Origin: Antechinus flavipes
Taxonomy: Eukaryota
Assembly: GCF_016432865.1 (NCBI RefSeq)
Contig: NC_067400.1
Span: 611,878,001-611,942,000 of the forward strand
DNA length: 64,000 bases
Reading direction: 5' to 3'
Shown here: positions 13,481 to 57,600 of the stretch, piece by piece
Layout of the letters: every line of letters begins with the position of its first letter
How positions within the stretch are numbered: the stretch's first letter is position 1
Program-made: the position numbers and the translations under genes
The notes under the pieces: model-generated
Told to the model about the DNA's origin: nothing
The model's input: the letters and a program-made list of their open reading frames with translations, nothing else
Databases searched by the model: none

Positions 13481-13494
13481 TAAGATCCCTGCTC

Positions 13495-16048: not shown

Positions 16049-16077
16049 GCCCCCGGGGCCTCCAGGCAGACCCCCGG

Positions 16078-16083
16078 AATAAA
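16078..16083 (+). terminator. SYNE4 polyadenylation signal
   Basis: AATAAA 30 nt after the stop; a second AATAAA at 16320-16325. Confidence 0.7.
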
Positions 16084-24760: not shown

Positions 24761-25030
24761 GTGCTGAAAACTATCTTTATATGTATTTGGAAAAATAAAA
24801 TACCATTGAGGGAAAAAAATGACAAAGAGGATGGTTTTAGAAAAGTCTGGGAAGACTGTATGTGAACTGACGTAAAGTGAGGTGAACAGAACCAGAATGT
24901 TGCAATATAATGAGACTTAAGTATTCTGGTCAATATAATGAACCTGAAGTCAGGAGGATCTGAGTTCAAATTTGACCTCAGACACTTAACACTTCCTGGC
25001 TATGTGATCCTGGGCAAGTCACTTAACCCC
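24761..25030 (+). repeat. 270 bp local duplication, copy 2
   Basis: Matches 23022-23291. Confidence 0.9.
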
Positions 25031-25813: not shown

Positions 25814-25953
25814 GGAGCTGCTAGGTGGCACAATGGATAGAGCACCAGCCCTGATGGCAGGAGATCCTGAGTTTTAATCTGATCTCAGACACTTAACACT
25901 TCCTAACTGTGTGACCCTGGGCGAGTAGTCACTTAACCCCAATTGCCTCAGCC
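25814..25953 (+). mobile_element. WSINE1-like SINE
   Basis: GGAGCTGCTAGGTGGCACAATGGATAGAGCACCAGCCCTG...CACTTAACCCCAATTGCCTCAGC. Confidence 0.8.
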
Positions 25954-26269
25954 AAAAAATATATATATATATAAAAACTTCTCCTGTAATTGGGGGCATT
26001 GAAGACCTACAGGAATGAGGGTCAAGTATATTCTTTGGGTATCCCAGTCTTCAACTCAGCAGATACTGGCCCAGATCTGGGAAAAGGAGGGTAAGATGAA
26101 AAGATTCAGCAAAAACAGGAGTTTTTCCATAGCAACCCAATCTAACCTCAGTTCCAAGGCTGGAGTGGCCAAAATGTCCAAGTCAGAAGTTCCTATACGG
26201 TATCATCCATCTAGACCTAACCACGACCAAACCCTGCTCTTAGTGGTTTTATCTCCCTAGTTATGACAG

Positions 26270-26430
26270 GAGCAAAGCTAGGTGGACAAAAGGGATGAAG
26301 CTCCTGGAGTCGAGAGGACCTGAGTTCAAAAACAGCCTCAGACACTTCCTAGTTGTGTGATCCTAAGCAAATCACTTCACTCTGTCTCAGTTTCCTAATT
26401 TGCAAAATGAATCAGAGAAGGAAATAGCAA
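26270..26430 (+). mobile_element. MAR1/MIR-like CORE-SINE
   Basis: tRNA-like head plus the CTCAGTTTCCT..TGCAAAATGA core. Confidence 0.7.
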
Positions 26431-27150
26431 ACTACTCCAAAAACAAACAAACAAAAAACCAACCTCAGGGAGAGGGAGAAAAATTTGGAACACAAAGTTT
26501 TGTAAAAGGTGAATGATGAAAACTAGCTTTGCATGTATTTGGAAAAAGAAAATATTATTAAAATAAATAAATAAATATATAAAACCAAATGGAGTAGTTG
26601 AAAATGACAACAATGATGATGGGAACCCTTTCCAGATAATTCTGGGCCTAACCCCCAAAATAATCCTGGATCCGTGAATCCAGGCTTCCTTTCTCCTCAG
26701 GAAGCATATTTTAACATAAAAATATAATTATTTTAGGACCACGGTTGAGGGCCAAGGATTTGGGGAACTGGGGGCAGTTCTCCCACTCCCCAGGTGTTCA
26801 GTATGCTCCCTCTTCCCACTCTGTAAATCTTCAGGCCTGCGAAGAAACCCTGTATAGGAGAATCAATCGATAAGCATTTATCAAACTCCCACTGTGTTTG
26901 GGAAACAAACTCTAGGCTTCAGAAACTGGCATCTGAAGGGACCTGGGGGAAAGGAGAAAACAACATGGATGCAGAATAAAGCGCAAAGAAAAAAGGGCCG
27001 AATACTTTAAATACAAGGCAGTTTGGGTCGATCAGAAACTGCTTCCCATAGATTGGATAATCTAGAGAAGGGAATAGCAAACAGTTCTTTGCCATAAAAA
27101 CCCCAAATGGGGCTTTTTGTTAAAGAAAAGAAGCATTTGTTAAGCACCTG

Positions 27151-29314: not shown

Positions 29315-29320
29315 TTTATT
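29315..29320 (-). terminator. FCGBP-like gene polyadenylation signal
   Basis: AATAAA on -, ~95 nt after the stop; a second one at 28933-28938. Confidence 0.7.
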
Positions 29321-29415: not shown

Positions 29416-29467
29416 TCAAGTGGAAAAATAGTCCTCGTGGTGGACAGGAGGGGGCGTCTTCTTCATG
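29416..29467 (-). CDS. FCGBP-like last coding exon
   Basis: Acceptor ctctgccatag; TG|C gives Cys, then [16 protein letters not shown]; poly(A) signal follows. Confidence 0.7.
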
Positions 29468-32400
29468 CTATGGCAGAGAGACAGAGATGGACAGACAGAG
29501 ACAGAAACAGANNNNNNNNNNNNNNNNNNNNNNNNNNNNNNNNNNNNNNNNNNNNNNNNNNNNNNNNNNNNNNNNNNNNNNNNNNNNNNNNNNNNNNNNN
29601 NNNNNNNNNNNNNNNNNNNNNNNNNNNNNNNNNNNNNNNNNNNNNNNNNNNNNNNNNNNNNNNNNNNNNNNNNNNNNNNNNNNNNNNNNNNNNNNNNNNN
29701 NNNNNNNNNNNNNNNNNNNNNNNNNNNNNNNNNNNNNNNNNNNNNNNNNNNNNNNNNNNNNNNNNNNNNNNNNNNNNNNNNNNNNNNNNNNNNNNNNNNN
29801 NNNNNNNNNNNNNNNNNNNNNNNNNNNNNNNNNNNNNNNNNNNNNNNNNNNNNNNNNNNNNNNNNNNNNNNNNNNNNNNNNNNNNNNNNNNNNNNNNNNN
29901 NNNNNNNNNNNNNNNNNNNNNNNNNNNNNNNNNNNNNNNNNNNNNNNNNNNNNNNNNNNNNNNNNNNNNNNNNNNNNNNNNNNNNNNNNNNNNNNNNNNN
30001 NNNNNNNNNNNNNNNNNNNNNNNNNNNNNNNNNNNNNNNNNGAAACAGAGACACAGTCAGAGAGACAGAGAGAGACACAGGGTCAGAGAGAGACAGAGAC
30101 AGAGACAGACAGATAGAGATAGAAACAGATAGACAGAGACACAGAATCAGAGAGAGAAAGAAAGACAGAGAGACACAGAGAGAAGGTAGGGTTAGTGGGA
30201 CGCGTGGGGGGCTAGATCATCTGCCGATCTGTTTGTCTGGGTCCTGGGAAGGGCCTTCTATATGGGAAGGGCCTCAGACATTGGACTCGGGGAGGGAGTC
30301 AGAAAAGAGAGAGAAAATTGGGGGATTAATTCCCTGGTAGGGAGATTATGGAGCTGGGGTCCCAAAAAGGGTTGGGCTAAAGGTATGGACATGTGGGAGG
30401 GTGAGATCTCCCTGGAGGGGAGATTATGCTCCTCACCATTGACTGAAGGTTTGAGCTTGACAGGACCGGAAGACGTCGTCCAGGCTAGTAGCAGGAAGCC
30501 CGCCCCTCAGGCGAAGGTCATCTCGGGGGTCCCCGTTGAAGTCACCACAGGCGGCTTGCAGCTGCCCACCCAGGGCTCGGGCAGCCCTCAGGGCCACGGC
30601 ACCTTTTGGCCCCACCAGCACCCGGAGAAGGGGCGGTCTCTCCACTAGGACCTTACCTGGCCCAGCCCAGCGGACCCTGACCCCTTTACAGACCTTCGCT
30701 GGGAGCTGGGCCCTGTGCCCGTTCACCTTCAGAGGAGAAAAGGAAGCTAAGGGGGCTGGCCGAGGAGGGGCCAGAATGCAGGTTCCTTGGGGGTAGGGGA
30801 AGATCGTGAGATAGGACAAAATCACAGGCCAGCTCTTCCCAGCTTTTATGCGGCCATTTGAAGTAGTGGACGTGGCCCATCGAGGTCTAGAAGAAGCACG
30901 ACTCATTGAGGGGTCGGTGACTTACCCAGACCTCCCTGTTGGGCCCCACAGCCACACAGCCGTCCTGGAAGCGGGTGGTGACCCATGCCTCTGGGGCGGG
31001 ACAGGCTGAGCAGGGCAGGTATTCTGTGACCACGTGGAACCAGGCAGGATCCTGGGGCTTGGCCCCGGTTAAGATGGTCAGCTCGTAGGCGCCCGGGGAG
31101 GCAAGGACAGGGACTCTGCCTTGGAAGCCGTCAAAGGTGGTAAAGAGGCCTCCGGGCACCAGGCGACAGGTGGCACTGCCCTTGCCCAGAGGCCCCCTGC
31201 AGCGGCGGACCCCCCGGTCCAGGACGCAGTCCAGGCCTTGGGGACACTGGAACGGCTGGCACCTTAGGTGACCCCCCGCTTGGCAGACGCAGCGTTCCCT
31301 GCAGCCTGGGAGGAGCAGCGTCTCACTCACCTGTGGGGAGGGCGCCGAGTCAGCCCGGGCCCTCCCTCTCCGATGACCCACTCACTCCTGCGGGGCAGCT
31401 GTTTCAAGACTCCCTTCTTTTCAGGGGCCCCACCTGTCTCTTAAAAGACCTGCGTTTGGAGATTTAGCCCAAATTCCCAAGGTTTAGAGCCTTGGATGGG
31501 GAGGGCTCATAAATCTAGTCCATTTTGCAGATGAACAAAGTGAGGCTGGAGGAAATTAAGTTATTTTATCAAGGTCACACAGGTAATAAGTGAACTTTTC
31601 TACCCTATCCTTGATTATCTCATTTACAAAATGGAGAATGATCCTTGTAATTTGAGGAAGGTGTTAGGAAGCCTTAGAAGGAAAACCTTAGAAGCCTATA
31701 ATCCCTGCTCTCTGGGGCAAATTACTTCTTTCTGCCTCAGTTTCCTCAAGTGCCAAGTGAGGATAATAGCACCTATCTCCCAGAGTAATTATGATGATCA
31801 ATTAAGGTTAAGCTCTTAGCACAATGCTTTGTATGTAGCAGACCATTCCCTTCTCAGGACCTTCCAGCTCTCCCTTGCCAATGTGTGCCTAAAACATGGG
31901 AGGTTTTCCACCTCCCAACAAGCCATCTTTTGTTATATAGGAAGGCTAATACATCTAGAGCCTGACTCTTTAGTTCCATCACAATTTGGTTTCTACCCTA
32001 ATCACCACCTGAAATGTCTCACTTTTTCATTTTTTTGGTGAATTGGGGTTATCTAAGTTTACACAGCTAGTAAGTGGTGTCAGAGGCTGAATTTGAACTC
32101 AGGTCCTCCCAACTGCTTTATCTACTGCCTCAATAATTGGAAAATTAATTGGTCCTTTTTCTTAAAAAAAGGTTCTATTGATAACATTTGTTTTTATCTA
32201 GGGGGTTATTTCCATCTCTCATTTAAGGAGCCCCTCTCTCATGACAAAGGAAAACAGGACTCACCAAAGCTGATGATGCTCCTGTAGTGAAAGGGAGGAG
32301 CTGCATCCTTCCTTTCCTCTGCCCCTAAATCACCCAGCTTGGTTTGGGATCATTTTTTGGCCTAGCCATCTCTCTCCCTTCTGGACCAGCCCGAGACATT

Positions 32401-38400: not shown

Positions 38401-41400
38401 CATCACCATGTATAAAATACATTCTGTGCTCAACGGTAGCTAGGTACAGCGAGTGGATAAACTGCAGGATCCTGCAGTGCAGGATAAATCTACCCTCGGA
38501 CACTTACTAGCTACGTGACCCTCTTTGCCTCAGTTTCCTCAGTTGTAAAGTGAGGATAACAACAGGACCTATGTCTCAGGATTGTAATAAAGATCAAATG
38601 AGATAATATTGACAAAGCACTTAGCACAGTGCAGGGCACATAGTAGGTGTCTAAGAAATACTATTACATAATAATAAAATAAAAAAATCTGTGTATATAT
38701 CTATGTATGTCTATTGTTGTTATTATATAAATGCTTGTTTTCTTCCTGTAATCACATCATATAAACTGAGAATGGAGGGAGGGGGGAATCATAATCTGCC
38801 TTTCCTTATGCTTTAAGGGCTTGGAATATTTTCCTCCTTACCTTTGATTTTAAGATCCCCCGGTTCCTCCAAGACTCAAATGTCAACATTTCTGACAAAC
38901 ATCCTGCCCCCTTCCTAGTTGTTAATCACTCCCCTCCCCACCAACAAATCATCTGCTATTTCTTGAGTATCTACTCATATATGTACATATTGCCCTCCTC
39001 GTTGGGAAGTAAAGTCTTTGAAGCACAGGGCTTCGTACATAGCTGTGCTTAGTAAACGCTTGCTGACTGATAGAGGATTTAAGCCCAATTAAAACATTAC
39101 TTCTTCCAGAAACTTTCCTCAGTTTTTCCAGTTGGTTATGACCTCCCACCGGCCCCCATCAATAGGTTTTTAATTTTCTAATACACGTCTCATGTTTTGT
39201 CACATTTATAGCTCCCTCTATTTCTTTTTTTACTCTTTTTTTTGGGGGGGGGAGAAAATGTCAATTGGGGTTAAATGACTTGGGTCACACAGATAAGACG
39301 TGTTAAGTGTCTGAGGTCGGATTTGAACTCAGGTCCTCCTGACTTCAGGGCTGATGCTCTGTCTACCGAGACATCTAGTTGCCCCCAGCTATCTCTATTT
39401 TTGATATTTTCGATGCTTTTACCAAAACTGTAAACTTCTTGAAGGAACGACTGTAGTAGCTAAACCCTCTGCCTCCATTTTTTCACAGAAATACTTAGCA
39501 AATGAGTTGAATTGAGTAGGATCCTCTCCCCCAGCAGCCCCTGCTCACCAGAATGTAACGACCACGGTGGAAGCAGCCACATCGCTCCTGGGATACGCAG
39601 CCAGCCCCATTGTACACGAAGCCGGGGTCACATTCACAGCCCTCGAAGCACTGGGGTAAGCAGCGAGCAGGAGCCAGGAGAGGGACACAGCCAAGGTCAC
39701 ATGTCCGGGCACAGGTGCTGTAGTGACTCCGGGGTGGGCACCTCAGGGCTGAGGGCAGAAGGCAAGGATCAGTGGCACAGAGGCTCCCCGGGTGCCCAAC
39801 AGAACAACGTTCTAATTGCCTTCCCGTCTCTTCCCAGCCCTCTCTACTTCTCAGGAGCCAATCGATCCCTCCCCCTAGCTCTGGTCTCCTGCTCCCCTTC
39901 ACAGTCTTTCCTCAGGGTTGAGCTGCTCGACCATTTCTTCTCAGTTAATCCTTTGCTCTCCCAACTGCAAGGCTGGCTCACCCCTCCCTCCGCCCCCAAT
40001 CTGCCTCCTCTGCTCCGACACGTGAGCTGCTGAACGTGGCAATATGTCAACCTAACGGCAATAACAGAGAAATCGATAGGTTTCCTGGGGCATGTATCCA
40101 AGATCTAAGAGAGTACCTCTCAAGACCTGTCGAAATGGATGAATACTACCGACTGGTGGTGATTCAGGGGGCACAAATCATTCCAGAAGAAACCCAGAAA
40201 GTTCCCTCAAAGTATTTGCCAAAGGGAAAAGCTTGGATTAGAAGGGAAAGACCCTGGGGGTCATGGGTCTAGTTTTAATCACTTCTGGCCACAGAAGACA
40301 AAGATGGAGAAGAGAAAAATTGGAGCTGGAAAGCAAAGTTGGAAGATGGCGCCCAAGAATGGGATTTATGGTTTAAAATATGGAAATAATGTAGTCCTGG
40401 GCAGAGACGGAGGGAATTTGACTTAAAGTCAGAAAGAATGGGTTTGTTTATTGTTCTGTGAGTCTTAAAGTGAAAAAAGGAAGGGAGAGGGGGGAAAACT
40501 GACTATTAATTCACCAAAGTGGATCCCATAGAGTAGCTCGAGTGAAGAAGGAAGAGTGGCAGATGTCCCCAGACGACAAAATCCAAGAAAAGATCATGGA
40601 CCTCAAATGTCTATTGACAAACGCCCAAAGTTTAGTCAACAAGGAAGAGGAACTGGAAGTCCTAACATGAAAAAAGGCAAGTTTGACCTCACAGGTGCCA
40701 CAGAGACGGGAATATCACCTTGGAGTGCGCTGGAGCTTGGAGTGACTTGCAAGAGCCGATTGTTAAATTTTCCATGGCACTGGTTATACCTTGGAAATTA
40801 TCAGTACTTACAAATCGAGCTTGATTTATTTTCTAGACTTAAGAAAGTAATGGAGAATGTGTCAGTGATGCATGTTAAATTTAGAAGCGTGCCATGAGTA
40901 TATTCCCATCCCAAGAAAGCCAGTTGTTAAACACTTATCAGCCCATTTTGCCACACAGGCGAAGGGGGGCGGAAGCGATTCTAAATTAAGGAGGGGGACT
41001 TCTGCATTCCGGTCACACTGGCCTACCAGCTGTTCCACAAACACGGCCTGCGAACGCCTCTCTTTGTGCCCCAGTTCTAGAATGTTCTCCCTCCCTCCCT
41101 TCAGCCTCGGAGGTAATCGGAGGCCCCTGGGCTTCCTCCAAAGCCCAAGCCAAGCCTCTTCTCCTCCCTGATTCTCTCCGGTTGCTATTGTTCTCTCAGA
41201 TAAGTGGATCCGGAGGAGGTGGAATCATTAGAGCCAAAGTAGTCATTAATGACTCATGGCCAACGTGGAGGGACCCTGTGGATCTGCCCTTGGCCCTGAG
41301 CTCTTCCTTTTTAACAGTCACACAGCAGGAATGATCCGTTTGCACCTTGAATTTTCAGATGGCATAAAGCCAGGAGGATGACAAAAGGAAAAAAGTCAGG

Positions 41401-47400: not shown

Positions 47401-50400
47401 GGTCACACTGGCAGCCCTCGGCGCACTGGCCCGGGGTCTGGACGAGGGCTTGGAGGCCTGGGCAGGCAGCCGGGAAGGGGTCTGCACACAGGCTGTAGTG
47501 ACTGTGCTTGGGACAGTGCATGGCTGTGGGCACGGAGGTGGGAAGTCAGCTGCCAAAGAGTCCCGGGCTCCAGGGTCTCCCCCCCGGCCGGGGAGTCTCC
47601 CCTGGGTCTCCAGCCTCTCTGTCTGGGCCCCGACTCTGTCCTGGGTCCTGAACAGCCCGGCTCCAGCTCCTCTGGACTCCCAGCACCAGCCCTTCCACCC
47701 CACCCCAAAGGGCCAGCCCAGCCCCCAGCCCTGGTTCCCCCCGGCCCCCAGCCCTTGCTGCCGCTGCCCCCAAACTCACCGCAAAGCTTCGAGCTCCTCC
47801 AGGGCAGCACCTGGGCCCCTGCCTCCTGGCAGGCGGCCACGTAGCTCCTGAGACCGCTGCACAGGACACCGTGGCTCCCCCCGCCCCGGAGGACATCGGC
47901 CAGGCAGCTTTGGAAAAAGGGTTCTGGGGGCAAAGCCCCGTGGCAGGGGGCAAACGGGCCCTCGGCGGCCAGCAGGATCCCGCAGGAGTCGGGCCCCCGG
48001 AACGGGGCGCTGGCGGCCTCCCCCATGGAGGGGCAGCCGGGACCGGGGCAGGGCTGGGGCAGAGGGCAGGGCCGGAAGCCGAGGTCTGGGCCCAAGGACG
48101 CGAGGTCGTCTGCCCCGTCGCCGTTGTAATTCCCACACAGCCCCAGCGTGTGGCCCTGGTAAGCAGCAGGCAGAGCCAGGTTGAGGTGCGGGCCCTGGCT
48201 CAGGACCAGGCGGGGCCCTTCCTGGATCACGAGCACCATTGAGGACCCCTGCGTGAAGGCTCGGACGCCCCCGCCAGGCAGTTCAAAGGGGAGACAGCAT
48301 CGTACTCCATCCACCTGCGGTTAGGAAAGAGATGGGGTGGGAGAGACTCCCTGAAACTGGGGAACACTCCGGGGGCTGCACTAGGTCCGGGAGGAGAGGA
48401 AGGAGAAAAGGCGAGGAGGGAGGTGAGGGAAGGGAGTCGGGAGGAGGAGGAAGCACCGATGACAAATGGATGCACCTGAGACTGAGACACGTAGGAATGA
48501 TCCCCAGAGATCCAGCTGGAGAAAGAGGCTGGGGCCCCCAGAGACCTCAGGCCCTCCCTGGGATGCTCACCCGCTTCATCCCTGGCAGCCTCAGAGCCCT
48601 TGGTCCTGCCCTCTCTCCAGCCCCCAAGGCCCTCGGGCTGCCGGGGATGGCCCACTCACCATCACGTAGCCCCAGTCCCCGCGATCGAGAACAAAGTGGC
48701 ATCCGGCCGCAGCGAGGGTCACGCGGTTGACGTCAGCCCCGTAGGGCCCGTTATCCACCAGCACTGAGAAGGGCGGGAGGCTCGCTGGGCAGCTGGGGGC
48801 TGTGCTGGCCAGGGGGTAGGAGCAGTGCCCACCGAGTCGGAAGATGGTGCCATCAAAGGTCCGGCAATGAGAGCCGCCAGAGATCAGGCAGAGCCCCGGG
48901 CTGGAGCCTGCAGGGCCAGGGGCAGCCTCGGGGGCCTTACAGGGGCAGAATATACGGCCTCCAGCCTGGCAGATGCAGGGGCTTCTGCACGATTCCCCCC
49001 AAACCCCCGGGAGCTGGAGGCCCGGCTCGTAGTAGTGGCCAGAGAGGAGGCAGCCACACTGGTGCAGGGGCACGCAGGCTGCCCTGCTCAGCACAAAGCC
49101 GGGGTCACACACACATCCCTCTCGACACGGTCCGGCCTGGCAGCCTGCGGGCCCCGAGAGGCTCCCGCAGGTGACTGGGCAAGCTGGCCCACACAGCTCA
49201 TAGTGGGAGTGAGCCGGGCATGGCGGGTCTGTGGGGAGGAAGGCCGAGTGAGTGAGCGCTATCTGGGCATCCCCCCTTCCCTCTGAAGTCAGGTGCCCAC
49301 TGAAGTGGGTCCTGGGGGGATGGGGGCCTAGATGTTTGATCTAAAGGTCAGTTCCCCGAGTCACTGAGGAGACAAAGACAAGGGGCCCAAGTCCCTTGGG
49401 GCTGAGGGCCCAGCTGCCAGGCTCTGCACTCACGGCAAAAGTCTGAGGTCCTCCATGGGTAGATGAGGATCCCCTCCTCCTGGCATGCAGCAGCATAGTC
49501 CGCGATGATGGGGCAGGCGCCTCTCCCGGGGATGAGGCAGGCATCCCGGACGCAGGCTTCAAAGTAGCCCTGGGGGAGCAGCTTCTGATGGCACAGCCGG
49601 AAGGGTCCGTCGCGTGCTATGAGACTGTGACAGCCTCCAATGGCCCCCTGGCACTGGCCAATGGTGTGCTTCCAATTGTCATCGATCTCTTCTCTGCAGT
49701 CCTGGACAGTTCCCATGCGGCAGCTGTAGACCAGGGCCAGGGTACCAGACAGGTCAGAGGCCAGGGGGTATCCCAGCATGGGAAGCAGGTCGTTGGTCGG
49801 GTCTCCGTCATAATTCGCACAGAGACCGACCACTTGTCCTGCGTAGCTCTTGGGCAGGGCCAGCACCAGGTGGCTGCCCCCATCGAAGGCCACTTCCAGG
49901 CCAAAGGAACAGCTCACGACGGTGTTCCACCCCCTGCGGAAAACCAGGACGCGGGTGCCCAGCTGGCAGGGAAGGTTCCTCCACGCCCCATTCACCTGCA
50001 CATGTAGGGACAAAGGTCATGTCAGGGAAGACAAGGAGAGAGACCCAGGAAACTATGGTGGGGTGGAGATAGAGAAGGAATCTAGGGAAAGACAGAGAAC
50101 AGGCGAGGGAGACAGAGACAGCAAAACACTTGGAGACAGCAAAAGACAGAGCCATAGAGTGGGGGGGGAGGGGGGGAGATAGTGAGAGGCATAGAGATAA
50201 GGGGGGAGAGAGGCAAGAGGAGAAGGAAAAAGCCATACAGAGAGATGGGGAGACCCAAGGAGAGTGTGGGAGACACTTGGAAAGAGAGAGACACAGGAGA
50301 GAAAGAAAGGAGACAGNNNNNNNNNNNNNNNNNNNNNNNNNNNNNNNNNNNNNNNNNNNNNNNNNNNNNNNNNNNNNNNNNNNNNNNNNNNNNNNNNNNN

Positions 50401-53400
50401 NNNNNNNNNNNNNNNNNNNNNNNNNNNNNNNNNNNNNNNNNNNNNNNNNNNNNNNNNNNNNNNNNNNNNNNNNNNNNNACCAAAGTGGGGCAGGGCAGGT
50501 GGACCAAGAGACCAAGCCGCAAGGAGAAAAAAAGGAGCAAGAGGAGGGCGGGGCTGGGTTCCAGGGTCCAGAAGCCCCGTCGGCCCGGGGAGCCCTCCAT
50601 GTCTTACCAGAACCCTGCCAAACTGGCCCTGGTCCAGCCGGACATGGCCTCCGGGCACAAAGACCTCGACCCCTCTCGGGTGCCCGGCAGGCCCGGCGTT
50701 GAAGAGGACGCGGAAGGGGGTCAGGGGCTGCTCCCCGATTCGGCCGTAGCTCCTGAGGCCGCTGAGCAGATAGCTGCAGGAGCCAGAGAAGCGGTAGCGG
50801 TGGCCATCAAAGGTCTCGAAGTGGCCCGCGCCCGCGGCTCGGCAAGTACCGCTCCCGGCGGCCTGGCAGCCGCGCACGCCCCCCGTCACGGCGCAGTGCT
50901 CGCTGGGCCCGCAGCCCGCCTCTCGGCAGTGAGCCTGGCCCCCGCCGGCGGGGCACCAGCAGCGTCGGCCACAGCCCGGGCCCCTCCAAAGGGCTTCCCC
51001 GGGCGCCAGGAGCAGCCCCTCGAGGCGGCAGCCGCAGCCCGGGCCGTCGCGCCGCACGCACGTGGGGCCGCTGCGCACGAAGCCGGGGTCACAGGCGCAG
51101 GTCTCCAGGCAGGGCAGCGGGCACCGCTGGGGGGGGTCTCCCTCCCGGTCTGCACACGTGGCCGGGCAGGCGGAACCGCAGGGCTCATAGTGGCTGTTGG
51201 GTCCGCAAATCCGTGCTTCAGAGACAGAGGACACAAAGAGGGACGGGGATGAGTCCCTTCATCGCTCCCAGAGGCCCAAGAGCCGCGCGCCTCCGGCCTC
51301 CCATCACCCGGGGTCCGAGAGCCTCTGCCTGATTTCCTAGGACCCGCAACCCTCGGCCCCGCCACCGGCCCCGGACCCAGAATCCTCGGTTTCGGACGCG
51401 GAAGGAGTCTAGGAATAGCAGCCCACACTAGGGCTCCTTCACACTGGGCTTTAAGATGCGCCACAGTGACGGGACCGTTAAAGCTCCGCAGTTCAGGCCC
51501 TTCCTTGCTGGACAGCTCCGCTGCTGGGAGGCTGCTCTGGTAGCTGCAACTGCCTCCCTAATGCGCTGCCCCCGCCGGGTACTTCCTTCTCTGAGCCAAG
51601 ATCCTGCCTCCAACACTCTCAGGCCTGCGCCCCCACCCCCATCCCAAGCTTTCTCTTCTCCTGGCCAAAGAACCTTAGTTCCTCCAACTAATTCTTACAC
51701 AGTCATTTCCCCTGCCGGCCCTTCTAAAGCACGGCTCCTAAAATGAAAATACCCTTCTAGATGGGCTTGGAACAGGGCAGAGGGCAAAGGGGACCTCCTC
51801 ATCACTTGGCCTCCAGTGACCCAAGCACGATTTCCTGTTTGGACTGTTTTATTCCGCTCACACTTGGCTTGGTGTTACAATAGATAGAGGGGATCTGGAG
51901 TCAGGAGGACCTGAATTCAAATGTGACCACAGACACTTCCTAGCCGTGAGATCCTAGGCAGTCACTTAACCTGGTTTGCCTCAGTTTCCACAACTGTAAA
52001 ATGAGCTGGAGAAGGAAATGACAAACCCATCTAGTAGCTTCACCAAGGAAACCCTAAATGGGATCAGGAGAAGTCAGATATCACAGAAAAGTGACTAAAT
52101 AAAAATTAGCTGAAAGCCAATTTAACCCCACCAGACCTTTCACAGGATCTGACCTCCTGTTGGACTTGTTCTATTCTGCAATTGGGAAGCTGACTTTTTG
52201 AACCTAAGTCAAGGACTTCAGGTTTCATTCATTATTTTATTAAATGTAAATTTAATATTATCAGATTGGCCCCAGAATTCTAACTTGTTGCCTGGTTAGC
52301 TTAAGTTTTTAATATCCAGAATCTCTCCTATCTCTCAGCTTTGTGTCATCTGCAAACTTAATGAAAAAGAAAGGATGTGAAGGAGAGGGGAGATAGAGAT
52401 ATAGAGGAAAAGAGAAAAGGAGAACAGACTAGGAAAACAAAAAGAGGGAAGGACCCAAATTAATGCACAAATGTTAATCTCTGTTTTATATTATCTGCAA
52501 ATTTAATGAAAAAGAAAGGAAGTGAAGGAGAAGAGGGGGAGATAGAGCTATAGAGACCCCAAATTAACCCACAAATATTATTAGCATTTTATACAAAAGT
52601 AAAAACCTAGAAAGAAGTAATAATAGAAACTATTTAAAGTAACTTTAAAGTGCATAAATAATTAGGAGTTTTACCTACTTAGAAACATTCAAGATTCATA
52701 TAAATATAACTATAGAACCCTTTATAGGAAGAGAAATAATTGGAGAAATATTCGTGACGCATGGGAGATAGGAAGGAGAGGAGACTGGGAAGAGGAAGAT
52801 GGGGAAGTAACCCTCGGAGCTTTTTTGCCATCTAAAACTTTGATAGGCATCCCATAAATTCTTTCATTCAAGTCACTTGAGTACTAAGAAGCTGGCCACT
52901 TCCCTCCTGGTCCAGGTCAAAGGAAGTCCCGCCCACTACTTAGGATCCACTGCCCACTGGCTCAAGGCAAATCCTAGTTTCCTTAGCCCGACCTAATTGG
53001 CCTTGCATCCCAAAAGATCCCAAGGTCCAGGATCACGATATATTTGTGCCAAGACCCCCGTGCACTTACAGCAATAGGTCACGAGCCTCCAGAGGCCCAG
53101 GGGTACTGCCTCCCGCTGACAGGCATGGGCATACGTCTCCAGCTCTCGACAAATCACCGGTCTATAGCCAGGAAAGGCACAAGCCACTTCCAGGCAACTG
53201 AGTACAAAGGGCTTGGGGTCCAGGAGCGGGTGGCAATTTCCAAAGGGGCCCTTCGGGTTTTCCATGAGCATACACGCTCTCATCTCCTGCCCCCCAGGTC
53301 TCAAAGTGCACTGAGACCTCCACTGTGAGTAGCAGGGGTCATCCTTCGGCTCCAAGGCCCAAGCTTGGGCAAAAAGTCTGACAGAGGCAGAGGAACCAGA

Positions 53401-56400
53401 TATCCCAGGGCTCGAATCCAGGATAGGGCCCTGCTGTGTGAGGCTCAGGTCATCTGCTGGATTCCCGTTAAAGTTCCCACAGAGGCCCCGAACATGGCCC
53501 CAGTACCCACCAGACACTTTAAGAGACAAGGCTTGCTGCCAGTCATAGATCAGGCGGAAAGCAATCTGAGGTCCCAGTCCCATGCTGGTCCCAACTCTTA
53601 CCCTTGCCTTGGCTCCTGTTGCAATCTCTGATATGGTCCAGCTACTTGACGGTACCTCTGCCCCTGTCTGGGCTATAGTCCCAGATCCTGTTGTTTCTTG
53701 TGTCTTGGTTTCAGTCCAAGTCCCAGCCCCTGCTATGGGCTCAGTATCAGTCCCTATCCAAGGCTCAGACCCTGACTCGGGGGAAGCCCCGGCAGCTGTC
53801 CATGTCTCGGGCCTGATTCCTGCCCCTGCATTAACTGCAGCCTCTTCCATGGCTGTGGTCCCTGTCCCCGTCCAGAATCTGGACCCTGTCTCTTGCCCTG
53901 TCACTGTGGTCCCAATTCCTGACCCGGTTACTGCCTCAGCCTGGACCTCAGCCCACAGCTCAGTCCCGCGGTAGTAGAGTCGAAGCTTCCCGTTTGCCAG
54001 GATCACCGGTAGCCGGACTCTCTGCTGGTCGACCTGGGGGGAGACCCGTTTGTGAAGGACCCGAGAGCCTTCAGGAAGAGGGGCTGAGCAGGGGCTCTGG
54101 GGAGTCGTCCTAGTAAGGGACTGATTCCCTGCTCTCCGAGAAAGGAAGGGGAGCGGGTCACAGATACCTGGGAGGACAGACCGGACACCCAGGCCCTTAC
54201 CCTGACGAAGCCGTATTCGTTTTTGGCAGCAGTGATCATGTAGCCGAAAACACTCAGGGTGACGTGGCGGAAGGGCAGCTGGCCCCCGCTGCCACCAAAC
54301 CACACGTGGAAGGCTGGGAGCCCTGCTCCGGTGACTCCTTGAAGACAGCGACACACTATGTACGTACAGGCTCCTGGTACTGCAAAGGATTGCCCGTCGA
54401 AGGTGTGAAAGTAGGGGAGTCCCGAAGCCCAACAAGTCCCTGTGGCTGCAGCTTCAGACCCAGGCTCAGCTTCAGGAAAATCCTCAGCAACTATGATAAG
54501 ACCCAAGGTCAGATCCCCCCTCAGGAACCTTCATGGATTCCAGGCACAATTCCTCAATAGACGCCACTCCATACCCAAGCCCAGGTTCTGACACAGATCC
54601 CCCCAAGGACCCAATTTTGGATTGTGACACAAAGGCGGCAATGGGCCCAATCCCGGGTTCCAGTCCTGGCTGGTGCTCTGATTCAGACTCACCCAAGGGT
54701 CCACCCACAACAATAGGTCCTGGTATAGACTGCCCCAGGGCCTCTGCCACGGGCCCTGCTGCAGCCACAGTTTCCGAGATGGCCTCAGGTTTGCTCACAG
54801 CTCCTGAAGCTGCCACTTGCGCAGACAAAGGCTTAGACTCAATGACAGTCACAGGTTTGGCCACAGCTTTAGCCATAGCCCCTGGCAGCCTTTGGGGCAC
54901 ACACCGAGGGACGTTGTTCACCAGGCGACACGATGTACCCTTGCTGCAGAAATAATTCTTGCAGGTTGGGGAGTAGACAGAAGGATGCAGAAGAAAAGGA
55001 TGCGGGGGAGGCCGTGGCGATGGGGGCTGGGAATGAGGGAAGCGGTCGGGGAGGGGCAGAGTGAGGGAGTCCACTTGGGGAAGGGTCTTGGGCTGAGGGT
55101 GGGGCAGAGAGAAGAACCCAGAGAGGGGATCGGGATCTGACATCTGTGGAGAGTGAACCAAGGAGCTGAAAGCTTGCAGATGTTCCGAAAGAGTCCTAGT
55201 TTGGAGAACTGTCAGGGAGGAGAGGAAACAGCTGGAGGGAGAGTGGGATCCAGGTGCCCAATTAAAAGCTCCTCTGCCTATCGGGATTGTGCACCCCAAA
55301 CCCTCAGAGACACAGAGTCCCGCAGGGGCTGGGCTCCTCACCTCCCCATGGGACTCAGATATCCCCTCCCTTCCTAGTTCCCAGCCCCTGTGGGCTCACC
55401 TCTCCCTGGGACTCAGATGTCCCCTCCCCACCAAGTTTCCAGCCTCTGAGGGCTCCTCACCTCCCCGTGGGACTCAGCAGTCCCTTCTCTCGCAGTCCCC
55501 AGCCCCCATGGGCTCCCCACTTCCCACTGGGACTCGGCCCAGCCCTAGCCTCTCCATAGGCTGGGAGCCCGGCTCACCAGTCGGCCTCTCTGCCTGCGTT
55601 CCAAAGCCAGAGTTCGCTGAGGTCCCGCAGCTGAGGACCCCTATGACTTGGCCCCTGAGAGTCTCCAGCCGGTGGCTGCCTTTGTCTCCAGTGCCAAAGG
55701 GGACCTCCGCCCAGGAGAAGTTTTCGTTTCCACAGGGAATGAGCCGCCAGGTCAAGTGGGTCAGCGGCCGCTTATCCAGCAGCACCGAGCCCGGCACGGG
55801 ACCCTCTCCGGAGGCCACGAGCAGCGCCACGTTGGAGAAGCCCGGCAGCTCAATCAGGGAGAAGCTGGAGCCGTAGGAGTCCTCGGACGGCACCTGCGCA
55901 AACCAGGGGTCGTAGACCACGCCCTGCCGAGACCCAACCCCGGCCAAGAACAGCACCTGGAGCTCCACCGAGGACTGGAGCGCAAGGGGCCTGCGCCAGT
56001 CCACCTGGAACCGCAGGACCCGGCCGGGATCCAGCAGCCGCTTGCCCCGGGTCCCGCCCCTCCAGAAGTCCAGGTGGCCCTCGCTGTCCGCCACGACGTA
56101 GACGTAGTCGGAGGAGCTTTTCGTCCCGGGATCCCGCGTGGCAAAGGGAGGCACGGCGTAGACGCGGCCCCAATGGCCCGCGGGCAGCAACTGCTCGCAC
56201 ACAAGCTTGCAGTCGCGGCCCGCGGGCAGGCAGCTGTGGCCCGCGATCAGCGCCACGGGGTGCTCGGCGCTCACCACGGTCCCCGACAGGTTCCTTTCGC
56301 TTTGCACCTGCACCGCCCCGAAGGGCTCCAGGACGACGTCCAGGGGCTGTCTGGCCTCGTGGGTCACGTTGTCCAGAATCACGAGGCCCGGGGCGATCAT

Positions 56401-57152
56401 CCGGACGTGCGTGGGCTGCGGCCCCGCCACCACAGCAAACTCCTTGTACCGGTCCCAGTCCCGCAGCGCCGGCGTGACGACGATGTAGCGCCTGCCCAGC
56501 TGCTCGCAGGGCAAAACGTGCGCGGTGTCCTGGGAGCGCGGCCGGGAGTTCACGGCCAGTACGGACACCTCCAGCGACGACGTGACCCGCACGGCGCCGA
56601 TGCTTGTTCCCGAGCCGCGCAGCTCCACGCTCGATGGCAGCTTTACGCACAGCGTGCGCCCGGGCTCCAGGTTCAGCTCCTGGCGGAAGGCGGCCCCCGG
56701 AGCCACCACGAGCACCTGGGCCTGCTTCTGCTCCGAATCCATCACCTTCTGCGCCCAGGACACGCACAGGCGGAAGTCTGGCTCCGCCGGACCCCCATTC
56801 TGCAGAAAGGCCGTGAGGAAGCAGCGGCCCGCCGAGCCCCAGGCCGAACCTGGCGGAGAATGCGGAGAGAGCCGGGTCGAGTCCCGGGGGCAGCCCTCCC
56901 AGCCAGCATCCTGCCGCACGTCCAACTCCGCCGCCGGCTTCCCGATCTCACCTCCTCTGGCTCTGATCCAGAGCCCTAACCCACCGCCTCAGGTCCGAGC
57001 CAGCGACTCCCTACCCTAGAAGCTCATTGCTCAGAAGGAGCTCTCCAAGCTCAATTGCTCCGCCACCCCTTGTCTCAGAGGTCCCTTCCTTAACACTCAC
57101 CCAGCGGGAGCCAGAGGTAGATGAAGAGCAGGGTGGGTAGACAGGCAGCCAT
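29416..57152 (-). CDS. FCGBP: IgGFc-binding protein-like (FCGBP family) secreted VWD-C8-TIL protein, 19 coding exons, ~2,968 aa; ortholog or paralog status unresolved
   Basis: Signal peptide, IgGFc-binding N-domain ([30 protein letters not shown]), six VWD domains with C8/TIL modules, and an FCGBP-type terminal VWD. All exons are GT-AG, phase-consistent and stop-free (8,907 nt total). Confidence 0.9.
30437..30726 (-). CDS. FCGBP-like exon: terminal VWD6 second half
   Basis: [22 protein letters not shown]; 290 nt, phase 0-2; donor TG|GTGAGG. Confidence 0.88.
30926..31330 (-). CDS. FCGBP-like exon: Cys-rich module and terminal VWD6 first half
   Basis: [33 protein letters not shown]; 405 nt, phase 0-0. 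Confidence 0.9.
32841..33027. mobile_element. hAT (Charlie-group, OC1/OposCharlie-like) non-autonomous MITE, 187 bp
   Basis: TIRs CTGGGGTCCTCAAACT and AGTTTGAGGACCCCTG (15/16 match); flanks ATCTACAA and ACTAGAAG resemble a decayed 8 bp xTCTAGAx TSD. Confidence 0.8.
34498..34630 (+). mobile_element. WSINE1-like SINE
   Basis: GGAGCAGCTAGATGGCGCA..AAGTCAGGAGGACCTGAGTTCAAATCC..CCCCAATTGCCTCAGC plus an A-tail. Confidence 0.85.
36484..36693 (+). repeat. 108 bp tandem duplication of an L2-like 3' end
   Basis: CTGAAATGAACATATTTCCTTTCTTAGG...TAGGTGCTTAATAA at 36484 and 36592. Confidence 0.9.
39264..39385 (-). mobile_element. WSINE1-like SINE
   Basis: Reverse complement of the WSINE1-type sequence. 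Confidence 0.8.
39549..39748 (-). CDS. FCGBP-like exon: TIL
   Basis: [36 protein letters not shown]; 200 nt, phase 1-0. Confidence 0.92.
40560..41990 (+). mobile_element. CR1/L3 LINE remnant (endonuclease start and 3' region)
   Basis: [32 protein letters not shown] at ~40600-40710; GAAAGATCTGGGGATTTTAGTGGACCACAAGCTCAA at ~41533. Confidence 0.75.
42141..42261 (+). mobile_element. WSINE1-like SINE, GC-shifted copy
   Basis: Same scaffold as the other copies, with many A/T to G/C changes. Confidence 0.8.
42507..43056 (-). CDS. FCGBP-like exon: VWD5 second half and C8
   Basis: [20 protein letters not shown]; 550 nt, phase 0-1. Confidence 0.92.
43580..44160 (-). CDS. FCGBP-like exon: TIL and VWD5 first half
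   Basis: [40 protein letters not shown]; 581 nt, phase 1-0. Confidence 0.92.
44744..45281 (-). CDS. FCGBP-like exon: VWD4 second half and C8
   Basis: [40 protein letters not shown]; 538 nt, phase 0-1. Confidence 0.9.
46070..46722 (-). CDS. FCGBP-like exon: TIL and VWD4 first half
   Basis: [32 protein letters not shown]; 653 nt, phase 1-0. Confidence 0.9.
47093..47234 (-). CDS. FCGBP-like exon: Cys-rich (VWC-like) module
   Basis: [44 protein letters not shown]; 142 nt, phase 0-1. Confidence 0.88.
47324..47523 (-). CDS. FCGBP-like exon: TIL
   Basis: [33 protein letters not shown]; 200 nt, phase 1-0. Confidence 0.9.
47780..48314 (-). CDS. FCGBP-like exon: VWD3 second half and C8
   Basis: [24 protein letters not shown]; 535 nt, phase 0-1. 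Confidence 0.92.
48660..49228 (-). CDS. FCGBP-like exon: TIL and VWD3 first half
   Basis: [32 protein letters not shown]; 569 nt, phase 1-0. Confidence 0.92.
49434..49995 (-). CDS. FCGBP-like exon: VWD2 second half and C8
   Basis: [24 protein letters not shown]; 562 nt, phase 0-1. Confidence 0.92.
50608..51215 (-). CDS. FCGBP-like exon: TIL and VWD2 first half
   Basis: [34 protein letters not shown]; 608 nt, phase 1-0. Confidence 0.92.
51895..52100 (+). mobile_element. MAR1/MIR-like CORE-SINE
   Basis: GGAGTCAGGAGGACCTGAATTCAAAT..CTCAGTTTCC..TGTAAAATGAGCTGGAGAAGGAAATG.. Confidence 0.75.
53070..54033 (-). CDS. FCGBP-like exon: VWD1 second half with a large insert, plus C8
   Basis: [35 protein letters not shown]; 964 nt, phase 0-1. 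Confidence 0.88.
54201..54490 (-). CDS. FCGBP-like exon: VWD1 first half
   Basis: [21 protein letters not shown]; acceptor tcatag with a CTGAC branch point; donor AGG|GTAAGG. Confidence 0.8.
54693..55136 (-). CDS. FCGBP-like exon: Pro-rich linker, Cys-rich (follistatin-like) module, Ala/Val/Pro linker
   Basis: [24 protein letters not shown]; donor TGG|GTGAGT at 54693; the acceptor is uncertain (55136 or 55073). Confidence 0.65.
55331..55545. repeat. ~60 bp degenerate tandem repeat, ~3.5 copies, in an FCGBP-like intron
   Basis: GGGCTC(CT)CACCTCCCC.TGGGACTCAG at 55331, 55392, 55450, 55510. Confidence 0.8.
55578..56849 (-). CDS. FCGBP-like exon: IgGFc-binding N-terminal domain
   Basis: 1,272 nt, phase 1-1, inside ORF 55474-56925. 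Confidence 0.92.
57101..57152 (-). CDS. FCGBP-like coding exon 1: signal peptide
   Basis: [18 protein letters not shown]|gtgagt; good Kozak (GGCATGG); acceptor ...ctctcccccag two bases upstream of the ATG. Confidence 0.85.
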
Positions 57153-57426
57153 GCCTGGGGGAGAGGGAGGAGGATTAAGAAGACGCTCTTCCACTGGACT
57201 TATTCCCCGAATGACTGAACCTAGCTCGCAGCTCTCTAGTTGGGACCCTCCCCCTATCCCGAGTTAGAGCCCTCCCCCTATTCCGAGTTAGAGCCCTCCC
57301 CCTATCCCGAGAAGCATCCCTCTTAGACCCTCCCAGCTGCCCCTAAAAAGAAGGGCCAAACTGCCAGCATCCCGCTCCATAGCCGAAAGGGTAAAGGACT
57401 GGCCTAGACGAGGGCTGGAGCCCCAC

Positions 57427-57600
57427 CTGTCCGGGGAGCCTGGCTGGGGCTGCTCCTTCAGCGGAAGGATTTATACTTCTCCGCACTCGGGTCCAGCACC
57501 GGGTCCCCAGCCCCACCCTTTCCCTACACGGATGTCCCTATTAATGCTGGCTCCTGGCAGGCCAGGGTCGGTAATTAGCCTTAATGAGCTTAAATTACCA
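57427..57600 (-). promoter_or_regulatory. FCGBP-like TATA promoter with a ~19 nt non-coding first exon
   Basis: TATAAAT on - at 57475-57469; CA initiator at 57445; donor CAG|GTGGGG at 57427; intron 57155-57426 ends in a strong pyrimidine tract. Confidence 0.7.

What the first reader, a model, noticed from the sequence alone, without database searches (positions are those of the whole stretch)
29416..57445. Intact ~2,968-aa FCGBP-like gene inside the LRFN3-SDHAF1 interval
Seen: 20 exons (19 coding), all GT-AG, phase-consistent and stop-free, with a TATA promoter, signal peptide and poly(A) signal. Established: human has LRFN3-SDHAF1-SYNE4-ALKBH6-CLIP3 in the same order and orientation, while FCGBP lies megabases away at 19q13.2; I know of no protein-coding gene in the human LRFN3-SDHAF1 gap. 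Inference: this is either an ancient FCGBP paralog lost or decayed in human, or a marsupial relocation or duplication. It is a candidate lineage-restricted mucosal, pouch or milk defence protein.
Basis: partly seen in the sequence, partly recalled or inferred. Interest (0 to 1): 0.88.

Follow-up and report, generated by a model that had tools for sequence, protein, structure and literature searches.

The report
Uncleaved FCGBP sister gene beside LRFN3
This is a real, spliced gene for a large secreted mucus-type protein, a sister of FCGBP, but it is not special to marsupials: dogs' relatives, seals and another marsupial carry an annotated copy at the same spot.

Summary
On the minus strand I rebuilt 19 coding exons (ATG 57152, stop 29416), all AG/GT, phase-consistent and stop-free, giving 2,992 aa. 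The protein has an IgGFc_binding N-domain, six VWD domains, and C8, TIL and TILa modules. The gene lies between LRFN3 and SDHAF1. All three N gaps fall in introns.

An annotated "IgGFc-binding protein-like" gene sits between LRFN3 and SDHAF1 in Sminthopsis, golden jackal and harbour seal. A fragment lies beside LRFN3 in black rhinoceros. In the N-domain tree these proteins form one clade (100/100) next to canonical FCGBP, whose cat copy lies beside fibrillarin. So this is an old therian paralog, not a marsupial novelty and not the FCGBP ortholog.

RNA contigs from a related species are spliced at seven model junctions. dN/dS against Sminthopsis is 0.41. No ortholog has a GDPH cleavage motif. 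Both C-terminal dimerising cysteines of FCGBP are kept. A published dog-saliva peptide matches the jackal ortholog exactly.

One caveat: the 202-nt exon 4/5 "intron" is read as coding in the orthologs. The window carries one extra base there, so only splicing keeps the frame.

The parts
57470..57475 (-). TATAAA box about 320 nt upstream of the ATG
   Evidence: It is conserved with its flanks in Sminthopsis. The transcription start and the non-coding exon 1 are not verified.
57101..57152 (-). Exon 2: ATG and signal-peptide-like start ([18 protein letters not shown]), donor in phase 1
   Evidence: 94% identical to the first coding exon of Sminthopsis.
55578..56849 (-). Exon 3: IgGFc_binding (FCGBP_N) domain
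   Evidence: Pfam PF17517, E=1e-41. 83% identical to Sminthopsis and 63% to P0005.
54693..55208 (-). Exon 4: Pro-rich linker, small Cys-rich module ([21 protein letters not shown]), Ala/Val/Ser-rich linker
   Evidence: Acceptor 55208 agrees with the Sminthopsis protein. No Pfam hit.
54491..54692 (-). 202-nt GT..AG 'intron' that Sminthopsis and carnivore annotations read as coding. The window has one extra base near 54497, so read-through ends at TGA 54486-54484.
54201..54490 (-). Exon 5: first half of VWD1 ([14 protein letters not shown], no GDPH)
53070..54033 (-). Exon 6: second half of VWD1 with a Thr/Gly/Ala/Glu-rich insert of about 130 aa, then C8
   Evidence: The insert is present with indels in Sminthopsis and very short in P0005.
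50608..51215 (-). Exon 7: TIL, TILa, first half of VWD2
   Evidence: An RNA loose end of a relative matches its 3' end at 27 of 30 bases.
50317..50478 (.). Assembly gap inside intron E7/E8
   Evidence: No residues are missing at this junction against Sminthopsis. RNA of a relative joins E7 to E8.
49434..49995 (-). Exon 8: second half of VWD2, then C8
   Evidence: An RNA contig piece covers 49433-49996.
48660..49228 (-). Exon 9: TIL, first half of VWD3
   Evidence: RNA joint 49227/49433.
47780..48314 (-). Exon 10: second half of VWD3, then C8
   Evidence: RNA joints 48314/48667 and 47523/47781.
47324..47523 (-). Exon 11: TIL
   Evidence: RNA joint 47234/47324.
47093..47234 (-). Exon 12: TILa. 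With exon 11 it forms a TIL-TILa pair that is followed by another TIL instead of a VWD-C8.
   Evidence: The reading that a VWD-C8 was lost here is an inference.
46070..46722 (-). Exon 13: TIL, first half of VWD4
   Evidence: RNA piece 46068-46725 and joint 45279/46068.
44744..45281 (-). Exon 14: second half of VWD4, then C8
44187..44321 (.). Assembly gap inside intron E14/E15, 27 nt upstream of the exon 15 acceptor
   Evidence: No residues are missing against Sminthopsis.
43580..44160 (-). Exon 15: TIL, TILa, first half of VWD5
42507..43056 (-). Exon 16: second half of VWD5, then C8
   Evidence: The best solved relative is mouse FCGBP, 8rde.
39549..39748 (-). Exon 17: TIL
30926..31330 (-). Exon 18: TILa, first half of the last VWD (VWD6). 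It holds Cys2851, the counterpart of human FCGBP C5284.
30437..30726 (-). Exon 19: second half of the last VWD. Its donor overlaps an in-frame TGA (CAATG|gtga).
   Evidence: Best PDB match is residues 2491-2561 of mouse FCGBP, its last vWD.
29512..30041 (.). Assembly gap inside intron E19/E20
   Evidence: Continuity is inferred from orthologs only.
29416..29467 (-). Exon 20, coding part: the split codon gives Cys2976 (counterpart of human FCGBP C5403), followed by a 16-residue tail and TGA
   Evidence: The tail is homologous in Sminthopsis and carnivores.
29315..29320 (-). AATAAA poly(A) signal about 100 nt after the stop and about 1.1 kb upstream of the SDHAF1 coding start

Best explanation
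The window holds the ortholog of a little-studied therian gene that databases call 'IgGFc-binding protein-like'. It is a whole-gene sister of FCGBP and has sat between LRFN3 and SDHAF1 since before marsupials and placentals split.

It encodes a secreted, cysteine-rich protein of about 3,000 aa. The layout is a signal peptide, an FCGBP_N domain, a low-complexity linker, and then six VWD assemblies that match canonical FCGBP's D1, D2, D5 and D7 in order.

Inferred mechanism: it behaves like FCGBP as a structural component of mucus or saliva. It probably pairs tail to tail through two symmetric disulfides between the last VWD (Cys2851) and the C-terminal Cys2976. Unlike FCGBP, it stays one uncut chain, because none of its VWD domains has the GDPH Asp-Pro self-cleavage motif.

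Shown: gene structure, domains, synteny, orthology, splicing in a relative, purifying selection, absence of GDPH and conservation of the two cysteines. Inferred: secretion, dimerisation, role in mucus or saliva, and function in this particular species.
For: Structure: 19 coding exons, all GT-AG, no stop. Pfam finds IgGFc_binding, six VWD, five C8, TIL and TILa.

Orthology: the model aligns end to end with the Sminthopsis crassicaudata 'IgGFc-binding protein-like' protein at 86% identity. Carnivore proteins align at about 50% through to the C-terminus.

Synteny: LRFN3-like gene, this gene, then a Complex1_LYR gene on one strand in Canis aureus, Sminthopsis and Phoca. In Diceros the gene follows LRFN3.

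Trees: in the N-domain tree this clade has 100/100 support and is separate from the canonical FCGBP clade of platypus plus eutherians (100/98). The two group together with a bird sequence at 91/95. Cat canonical FCGBP lies beside fibrillarin. The per-VWD tree pairs D1 with D1, D2 with D2, D4 with D5 and D6 with D7.

Transcription: RNA contigs of 2.3 and 4.6 kb from a relative, in two runs, are spliced at the model junctions from E7 to E14.

Selection: dN/dS is 0.41 (bootstrap 0.36-0.47) over 2,928 codons, with no stops in either species.

Motifs: there are 0 GDPH motifs in the window and in seven orthologs, against 5 in the 1,842-aa Myotis FCGBP. Both dimerising cysteines described for FCGBP (PMC11796319) are conserved in the alignment.

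Protein evidence: the dog-saliva peptide VAGLCGNFNRDPADDVDGPDPR (PMC6279226) is an exact substring of the Canis aureus ortholog.
Against: No RNA run of the window's own species was found, so the transcripts come from a relative about 8% diverged in exons.

The exon 4/5 junction depends on a 202-nt intron that the orthologs' annotations read as coding. The window has one extra base there, and unspliced RNA would end the protein after about 680 aa.

Exon 1 is unverified. The last junction spans a 530-N gap.

The saliva evidence is a single low-scoring peptide. The tissue of the RNA runs is hidden. A dN/dS of 0.41 indicates fairly weak constraint.

Secretion, dimerisation and lack of cleavage are inferred from sequence only.
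Confidence: 0.82

Rival explanations
1. In this species the gene is a very recent pseudogene, or a null allele. Under this reading the exon 4/5 linker is one exon, as annotated in Sminthopsis and carnivores, and the one-base insertion near 54497 truncates the protein at TGA 54486-54484.
For: The orthologs read the 202-nt stretch as coding. It is open in exon 4's frame for 67 codons. The window differs from Sminthopsis by one base just before the stop.
Against: The stretch has a strong GT donor (score 8.7) and an AG acceptor, and removing it restores the frame exactly. The 2,380 codons downstream have no stop or frameshift, with dN/dS of 0.14-0.68 per exon. An old inactivation should have left more damage. 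A base error in a gapped assembly would look the same.
Confidence: 0.12
2. It is the 1:1 ortholog of canonical FCGBP, moved to a new place in marsupials.
For: It has the same domain family, and its last VWD and C-terminal cysteine match FCGBP. No canonical marsupial FCGBP turned up.
Against: The gene groups at 100/100 with carnivore genes that sit at the same locus, and carnivores (Zalophus, Vulpes, Felis) also have a canonical FCGBP. The cat canonical copy lies beside fibrillarin. The N-domain is only about 30% identical to canonical FCGBP against about 51% to the carnivore orthologs.
Confidence: 0.03
3. It is a marsupial-only duplication, a lineage-restricted pouch or milk defence gene.
Against: The same slot is occupied in jackal, seal and rhinoceros. 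The eutherian and marsupial copies are sister groups.
Confidence: 0.01

Closest known systems
RefSeq/GenBank 'IgGFc-binding protein-like' genes at the LRFN3-SDHAF1 locus (Sminthopsis crassicaudata, Canis aureus, Phoca vitulina, Leptonychotes weddellii, Callorhinus ursinus)
   Same: Same flanking genes and strand, same domain order, no GDPH, and the same C-terminal tail exon. Identity is 86% to Sminthopsis and about 50% to the carnivores, and together they form a 100/100 clade.
   Different: The window removes a 202-nt stretch of the linker that those annotations read as coding. The Thr/Gly-rich insert in VWD1 is found only in the window and Sminthopsis. The carnivore models are shorter (2,119-2,744 aa), partly because of how they were predicted.
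Canonical FCGBP (human 13 vWD, mouse 7 vWD; PDB 8rde, 8r0t)
   Same: FCGBP_N domain, repeated VWD-C8-TIL-TILa units, and a last VWD without C8 that ends in a cysteine. Both dimerising cysteines are conserved, and the units correspond in order: D1, D2, D5 and D7 (PMC11796319).
   Different: Different locus: FBL-adjacent against LRFN3-SDHAF1. Separate clade with a long stem, and about 30% identity in the N-domain. It has no GDPH, whereas 11 of 13 human VWDs have the motif and are cleaved (PMC10880436, PMC8267560). It has six VWDs plus an orphan TIL-TILa, a longer low-complexity linker and a 16-residue tail after the last cysteine.
Rodent Fcgbpl1 (9530053A07Rik)
   Same: It is also named as an FCGBP-like family member. 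It is mentioned only in expression lists.
   Different: I did not obtain its sequence, so the relationship is untested. From my own memory it lies next to Fcgbp, not next to Lrfn3. No rodent protein appeared among relatives of this clade.
Other multi-VWD proteins: gel-forming mucins, VWF, zonadhesin, alpha-tectorin, otogelin
   Same: VWD-C8-TIL assemblies. VWF, MUC2, MUC5B and MUC5AC are weaker PDB matches.
   Different: Pfam found none of their defining domains in the exons scanned: no MAM, NIDO, ZP, VWA, CTCK or long PTS domain. Those proteins lack the FCGBP_N domain (PMC4948705).

Membership tests
FCGBP family (FCGBP_N plus multiple VWD assemblies, as in Lang et al. 2016) | N-terminal FCGBP_N / IgGFc_binding domain (PF17517) | tested here: met
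   E=1e-41 over profile positions 2-292 of 297. It sits directly after the signal-peptide exon.
FCGBP family (FCGBP_N plus multiple VWD assemblies, as in Lang et al. 2016) | Several VWD-C8-TIL units following the N-domain | tested here: met
   Six VWD, five C8 and seven TIL, with TILa scored in four of the scanned stretches. The best solved relative is mouse FCGBP, 8rde, at E=1e-190 for one exon summed over repeats.
FCGBP family (FCGBP_N plus multiple VWD assemblies, as in Lang et al. 2016) | Secretory signal peptide | tested here: inconclusive
   The hydrophobic start [18 protein letters not shown] was judged by eye only. No predictor was available.
Canonical FCGBP (orthologs of human FCGBP) | Falls in the canonical clade and lies at the FBL-adjacent locus | tested here: not met
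   It forms a separate 100/100 clade. The window gene lies between LRFN3 and SDHAF1, while cat FCGBP lies beside fibrillarin.
Canonical FCGBP (orthologs of human FCGBP) | GDPH autocatalytic cleavage motif in most VWD domains | tested here: not met
   0 of 6 VWDs in the window and 0 in all seven orthologs. Canonical and non-mammalian FCGBPs in the same data set have 1-8.
Canonical FCGBP (orthologs of human FCGBP) | C-terminal VWD without C8, carrying the two cysteines that form the homodimer | tested here: met
   Alignment columns holding Cys2851 and Cys2976 are shared with human, cat and elephant FCGBP. The cysteines are identified from PMC11796319. The disulfide itself was not tested.
LRFN3-SDHAF1-locus 'IgGFc-binding protein-like' orthogroup | Position between LRFN3 and SDHAF1 on their strand | tested here: met
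   Window. Canis aureus, Sminthopsis and Phoca. Diceros on the LRFN3 side.
LRFN3-SDHAF1-locus 'IgGFc-binding protein-like' orthogroup | Monophyly and colinear full-length alignment | tested here: met
   100/100 clade. A single 2,991-residue alignment to Sminthopsis, and carnivores aligned through to the C-terminus.
Gel-forming mucins | Long PTS domain and a C-terminal cystine knot | tested here: not met
   Pfam finds no CTCK or VWC. The only Thr-rich stretch is the insert of about 130 aa in VWD1.

The most novel reading that the evidence does not exclude
Therian mammals inherited two FCGBP genes. One is the self-cleaving FCGBP of gut mucus. The other is this never-cleaved sister gene beside LRFN3. 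Marsupials and caniform carnivores would still use the second one, perhaps as a salivary or oral mucus protein. Primates, rodents and other placentals would have lost it or let it decay, as the rhinoceros fragment and the anonymous decayed ORFs hint. That would give a natural experiment on what GDPH cleavage contributes to VWD-protein function.
Probability: 0.45. Interest if true: 0.5.

Novelty: new member of a known kind. Interest (0 to 1): 0.4.

Why it matters
FCGBP is one of the most abundant mucus proteins, and its function is still unsettled. Its hallmark is self-cleavage at GDPH in nearly every VWD domain.

This gene is a full-length sister that has kept the overall layout and the dimerising cysteines but has no cleavage site at all. 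It appears to have been lost from the best-studied mammals. That makes it a natural comparison for what cleavage is for. It also shows that human and mouse gene lists miss a member of the mammalian mucus and saliva protein set.

For genome annotation, it shows that the LRFN3-SDHAF1 interval is not empty in all mammals.

The matter is modest. Automated pipelines already predict the gene in several species, and its biochemistry is expected to resemble FCGBP's.

Tried and rejected
- Searching the whole spliced protein was not possible, because no stop-free reference exists for it. I worked exon by exon and through orthologs' protein ids.
- A PDB search with the N-domain found nothing.
- Paper searches for FCGBP with marsupial, LRFN3 or SDHAF1 found no description of this paralog. 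Lang et al. 2016 treat FCGBP as one vertebrate family.
- RNA runs X1 and X2 held only a 31-mer repeat at 50156-50189 and show no expression. No RNA run held the 5' part of the gene.
- Context look-ups failed for Myotis P0177 and Varanus P0023. Look-ups for Zootoca and Pelodiscus showed no informative neighbours within 10 kb. So the sauropsid locus and the date of the duplication stay open.
- Hedgehog LOC107523584 falls in the canonical clade, not this one.
- I considered that the VWD1 insert or the exon 4/5 stretch could be ordinary introns. The insert is colinear and in frame in Sminthopsis. The exon 4/5 stretch remains ambiguous. Intron and exon identity to Sminthopsis are too similar (85-91% against about 90%) to settle it.
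- I did not look up the letters of any N gap.
Full report
**1. What is in the sequence**

The window has five N runs. Three lie inside the finding. Stop-free stretches rich in cysteine line up on the minus strand from about 57,000 to 30,400. Pfam scans of these stretches gave:
- an IgGFc_binding N-terminal domain (E=1e-41);
- six VWD domains, each split into two halves;
- five C8 domains;
- seven TIL domains, with TILa scored in four of the scanned stretches.

I scored donors and acceptors and required matching phases, then fixed the remaining ends from the sequence itself. This gave 19 coding exons with ATG at 57152 and TGA at 29418-29416. All are flanked by AG and GT, none has an internal stop, and the product is 2,992 aa.

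Junctions fall at the same places in each repeat. One is in mid-VWD, in phase 0 before a V(D/N)G. The other follows C8, in phase 1 after the PWR...C motif. That regularity is what a real repeated gene looks like.

The Sminthopsis protein supports 55208.

TATAAA lies at 57475 and AATAAA at 29320. The TATA box and its surroundings are conserved in Sminthopsis, but the proposed donor of the non-coding exon 1 is not. Exon 1 therefore stays unverified.

**2. The gaps**

All three gaps lie in model introns and are flanked by CTCTGT-type simple repeats:

| Gap | Intron |
|---|---|
| 50317-50478 | E7/E8 |
| 44187-44321 | E14/E15, 27 nt from the acceptor |
| 29512-30041 | E19/E20 |

I did not try to fill them. 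Three indirect tests argue that no coding sequence is hidden there:
- The global alignment with the Sminthopsis ortholog has no insertion at any of the three junctions.
- An RNA contig of a relative runs from exon 8 straight into the end of exon 7, matching 27 of 30 bases.
- The 17-codon last exon beyond the largest gap is homologous to the C-terminal tail of the marsupial and carnivore orthologs. This includes the cysteine made by the split codon.

The corresponding Sminthopsis introns are longer for two of the three gaps. The estimated gap lengths are probably too small.

**3. Surroundings**

The flanking genes are as follows:

| Gene | Position | Strand |
|---|---|---|
| CLIP3 (ankyrin and CAP-Gly exons) | 1-3200 | + |
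| ALKBH6 | about 10,800 | + |
| SDHAF1 | 28221-27799 | - |
| LRFN3, last exon | 63998-63483 | - |

Earlier notes of this scan place THAP8 before the window and NFKBID after it. That fits the order I recall for human 19q13.12. The gene therefore lies in the LRFN3-SDHAF1 interval, on the same strand as both neighbours.

**4. Relatives**

An exhaustive HMMER search with the N-domain exon found one representative at 63% identity. Everything else full-length was at or below 37%.

That representative (P0005, UniParc UPI0000D90EC8, species not named by the tools) is colinear with the model at 63-67% identity. Searching with it found annotated "IgGFc-binding protein-like" proteins of these species:
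- Sminthopsis crassicaudata (3,065 aa)
- Callorhinus ursinus
- Leptonychotes weddellii
- Phoca vitulina
- Canis aureus

The model aligns to the Sminthopsis protein in one piece over residues 1-2991, at 86% identity. It aligns to the carnivore proteins at about 50% as far as the C-terminus.

Genomic context is the decisive result. In Canis aureus, Sminthopsis and Phoca the gene lies between an LRR/Ig/fn3 gene of 628-664 aa and a 118-119-aa Complex1_LYR gene, all on one strand. In Sminthopsis the upstream gene carried no Pfam record. In Diceros bicornis a 412-aa N-domain fragment, followed by VWD/C8/TIL gene pieces, comes right after the LRFN3-like gene.

A second search from the fur-seal protein found no further orders among proteins of 1.5-4.8 kaa. 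Two anonymous short ORFs (P0113, P0120) are closest to the carnivore copies but look decayed, including one lost conserved cysteine.

**5. Relation to FCGBP**

A search from the Myotis "IgGFc-binding protein" returned canonical FCGBP from many placental orders, including man, cat, sea lion and Arctic fox. It also returned platypus, turtles, squamates, a bird, frogs and fishes. The cat gene lies beside fibrillarin. From my own knowledge that is the human FCGBP neighbourhood.

In a careful maximum-likelihood tree of N-domains:
- The window, Sminthopsis, P0005, the four carnivores and the rhinoceros fragment form a clade with 100/100 support and a long stem.
- Platypus plus placental FCGBP form another clade (100/98).
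- The two clades and one long-branched bird sequence group at 91/95.

Carnivores therefore have both genes, and the window's gene is not the FCGBP ortholog.

A tree of single VWD units pairs this gene's units with FCGBP's units in order:

| This gene | Canonical FCGBP | Support |
|---|---|---|
| D1 | D1 | 83/85 |
| D2 | D2 | 81/91 |
| D4 | D5 | within a 95/91 group |
| D6 | D7, the last | within a 100/100 group |

The duplication therefore copied an ancestor that already had many units. The TIL-TILa pair of exons 11-12 is followed at once by another TIL. It looks like the remnant of a unit that lost its VWD-C8, which is an inference.

Whether the split happened on the mammalian stem or earlier cannot be settled here. 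The long stem and the uninformative sauropsid contexts leave it open.

**6. Is it used?**

No RNA run of the window's own species was found. Two small RNA runs of another organism hold contigs of 2.3 and 4.6 kb at high word depth. These lie on the window only over exons, and their joints fall at the model's boundaries:
- Direct joints: E8/E9, E9/E10, E10/E11, E11/E12 and E13/E14.
- Loose ends matching E7/E8 (27/30), E12/E13 (21/27) and E13/E14 (24/27).

Their per-exon divergence from the window (5.5-12%) tracks that of the Sminthopsis genomic exons. The organism is therefore Sminthopsis or something equally distant. Its tissue is hidden.

Codon comparison with Sminthopsis over 2,928 codons gives dN 0.073, dS 0.175 and dN/dS 0.41 (bootstrap 0.36-0.47). 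Neither species has a stop. This is purifying but fairly relaxed selection, and strongest in the C-terminal half.

A proteomic study of dog saliva lists one peptide for "IgGFc-binding protein-like" (PMC6279226). That peptide is an exact substring of the Canis aureus ortholog and differs in the seal copies. It is a single weak identification and should be treated only as a lead.

**7. The weak point of "intact"**

The only large difference from the Sminthopsis protein is 61 residues at the exon 4/5 junction. Sminthopsis and the carnivores read the linker as one exon.

The window's 202-nt intron has a strong donor (TTGG|GTGAGT) and an AG acceptor. It is also open for 67 codons in exon 4's frame. 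Relative to Sminthopsis the window has one extra base near 54497, and read-through then ends at TGA 54486-54484. In Sminthopsis the same GT..AG stretch is 183 nt, a multiple of three, so both forms would be in frame there.

Three readings remain:
- an intron inside a coding exon, which this species now depends on;
- a very recent frameshift allele;
- a base error.

The 2,380 undamaged codons downstream argue against an old inactivation.

**8. How it probably works**

By homology the product is a secreted, disulfide-rich mucus-type protein. Two features stand out.

First, none of its six VWD domains, and none in any ortholog, has GDPH. In human FCGBP, 11 of 13 VWDs have the motif. They are cleaved at Asp-Pro, and cleavage raises protease resistance (PMC10880436, PMC8267560). 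This protein should therefore stay a single uncut chain, and it cannot form the cleavage-derived reactive end proposed for FCGBP (PMC4948705).

Second, its last VWD matches the last vWD of mouse FCGBP in the PDB (8rde residues 2491-2561). The two cysteines that make the FCGBP homodimer, human C5284 and C5403 (PMC11796319), align with Cys2851 and Cys2976. A tail-to-tail disulfide dimer is thus likely. This gene adds a 16-residue tail after the last cysteine, encoded by its own small exon and conserved from marsupials to carnivores.

All of this section is inference from sequence.

**9. Verdict**

The gene is real, conserved, transcribed and spliced in a close relative, and probably functional here, subject to the exon 4/5 caveat.

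It is an old FCGBP paralog that is absent from human annotation as far as I know. It is neither marsupial-specific nor unannotated. I found no paper that describes it. It is best filed as a new, uncharacterised member of a known family, of moderate interest.

Noticed in passing
window 53566-53964 (-), inside exon 6: The Thr/Gly/Ala/Glu-rich insert of about 130 aa with periodic Trp in VWD1 is in frame and colinear in Sminthopsis, with small indels. In the more distant marsupial-type protein P0005 it is only a short TGTGTGT-like stretch. It therefore looks like a lineage-specific expansion of a short repeat between two beta-strands.
   Followed up: partly
window 55380-55570 (-), intron E3/E4: Tandem units of about 60 bp each carry a strong GT donor-like site (scores 9-10). 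The same intron is 369 nt here and 1,474 nt in Sminthopsis, so the repeat number varies.
   Followed up: partly
window 30042-30210, 29470-29511, 44322-44590, 50100-50316: CTCTGT/CTGTCT-type simple repeats border all three assembly gaps in the gene. This probably explains why the assembly broke there. The Sminthopsis introns at two of these places are about 1 kb longer.
   Followed up: partly
proteins P0113 (75 Logan contigs) and P0120 (ENA): These are short ORFs closest to the carnivore copies of this gene (53% and 74%). They have lost a conserved cysteine and carry a deletion in the VCEQLLP motif. They may be decayed copies in unidentified, much-sequenced placental species.
   Followed up: partly
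L001 (Diceros bicornis minor), 9500-27033: The rhinoceros copy after LRFN3 is annotated as three separate hypothetical proteins. It matches the model in short pieces in changing frames at 30-60% identity, and it has a long branch in the tree. It may be decaying or may simply be badly predicted.
   Followed up: partly
L002 (Erinaceus europaeus), 10001-67175: Hedgehog LOC107523584 carries several FCGBP_N domains in tandem and lies next to a 4,476-aa protein that also has several. Its first N-domain falls in the canonical FCGBP clade.
   Followed up: no
window 29315-28221 (-): The poly(A) signal of this gene lies only about 1.1 kb upstream of the SDHAF1 start codon, inside SDHAF1's CpG-rich promoter region. 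Read-through or promoter interference between the two genes is conceivable.
   Followed up: no
window 760-1540 (+), within CLIP3: A GC-rich tandem repeat in a CLIP3 intron is open in several frames on both strands (for example GGPDWWGE units).
   Followed up: no
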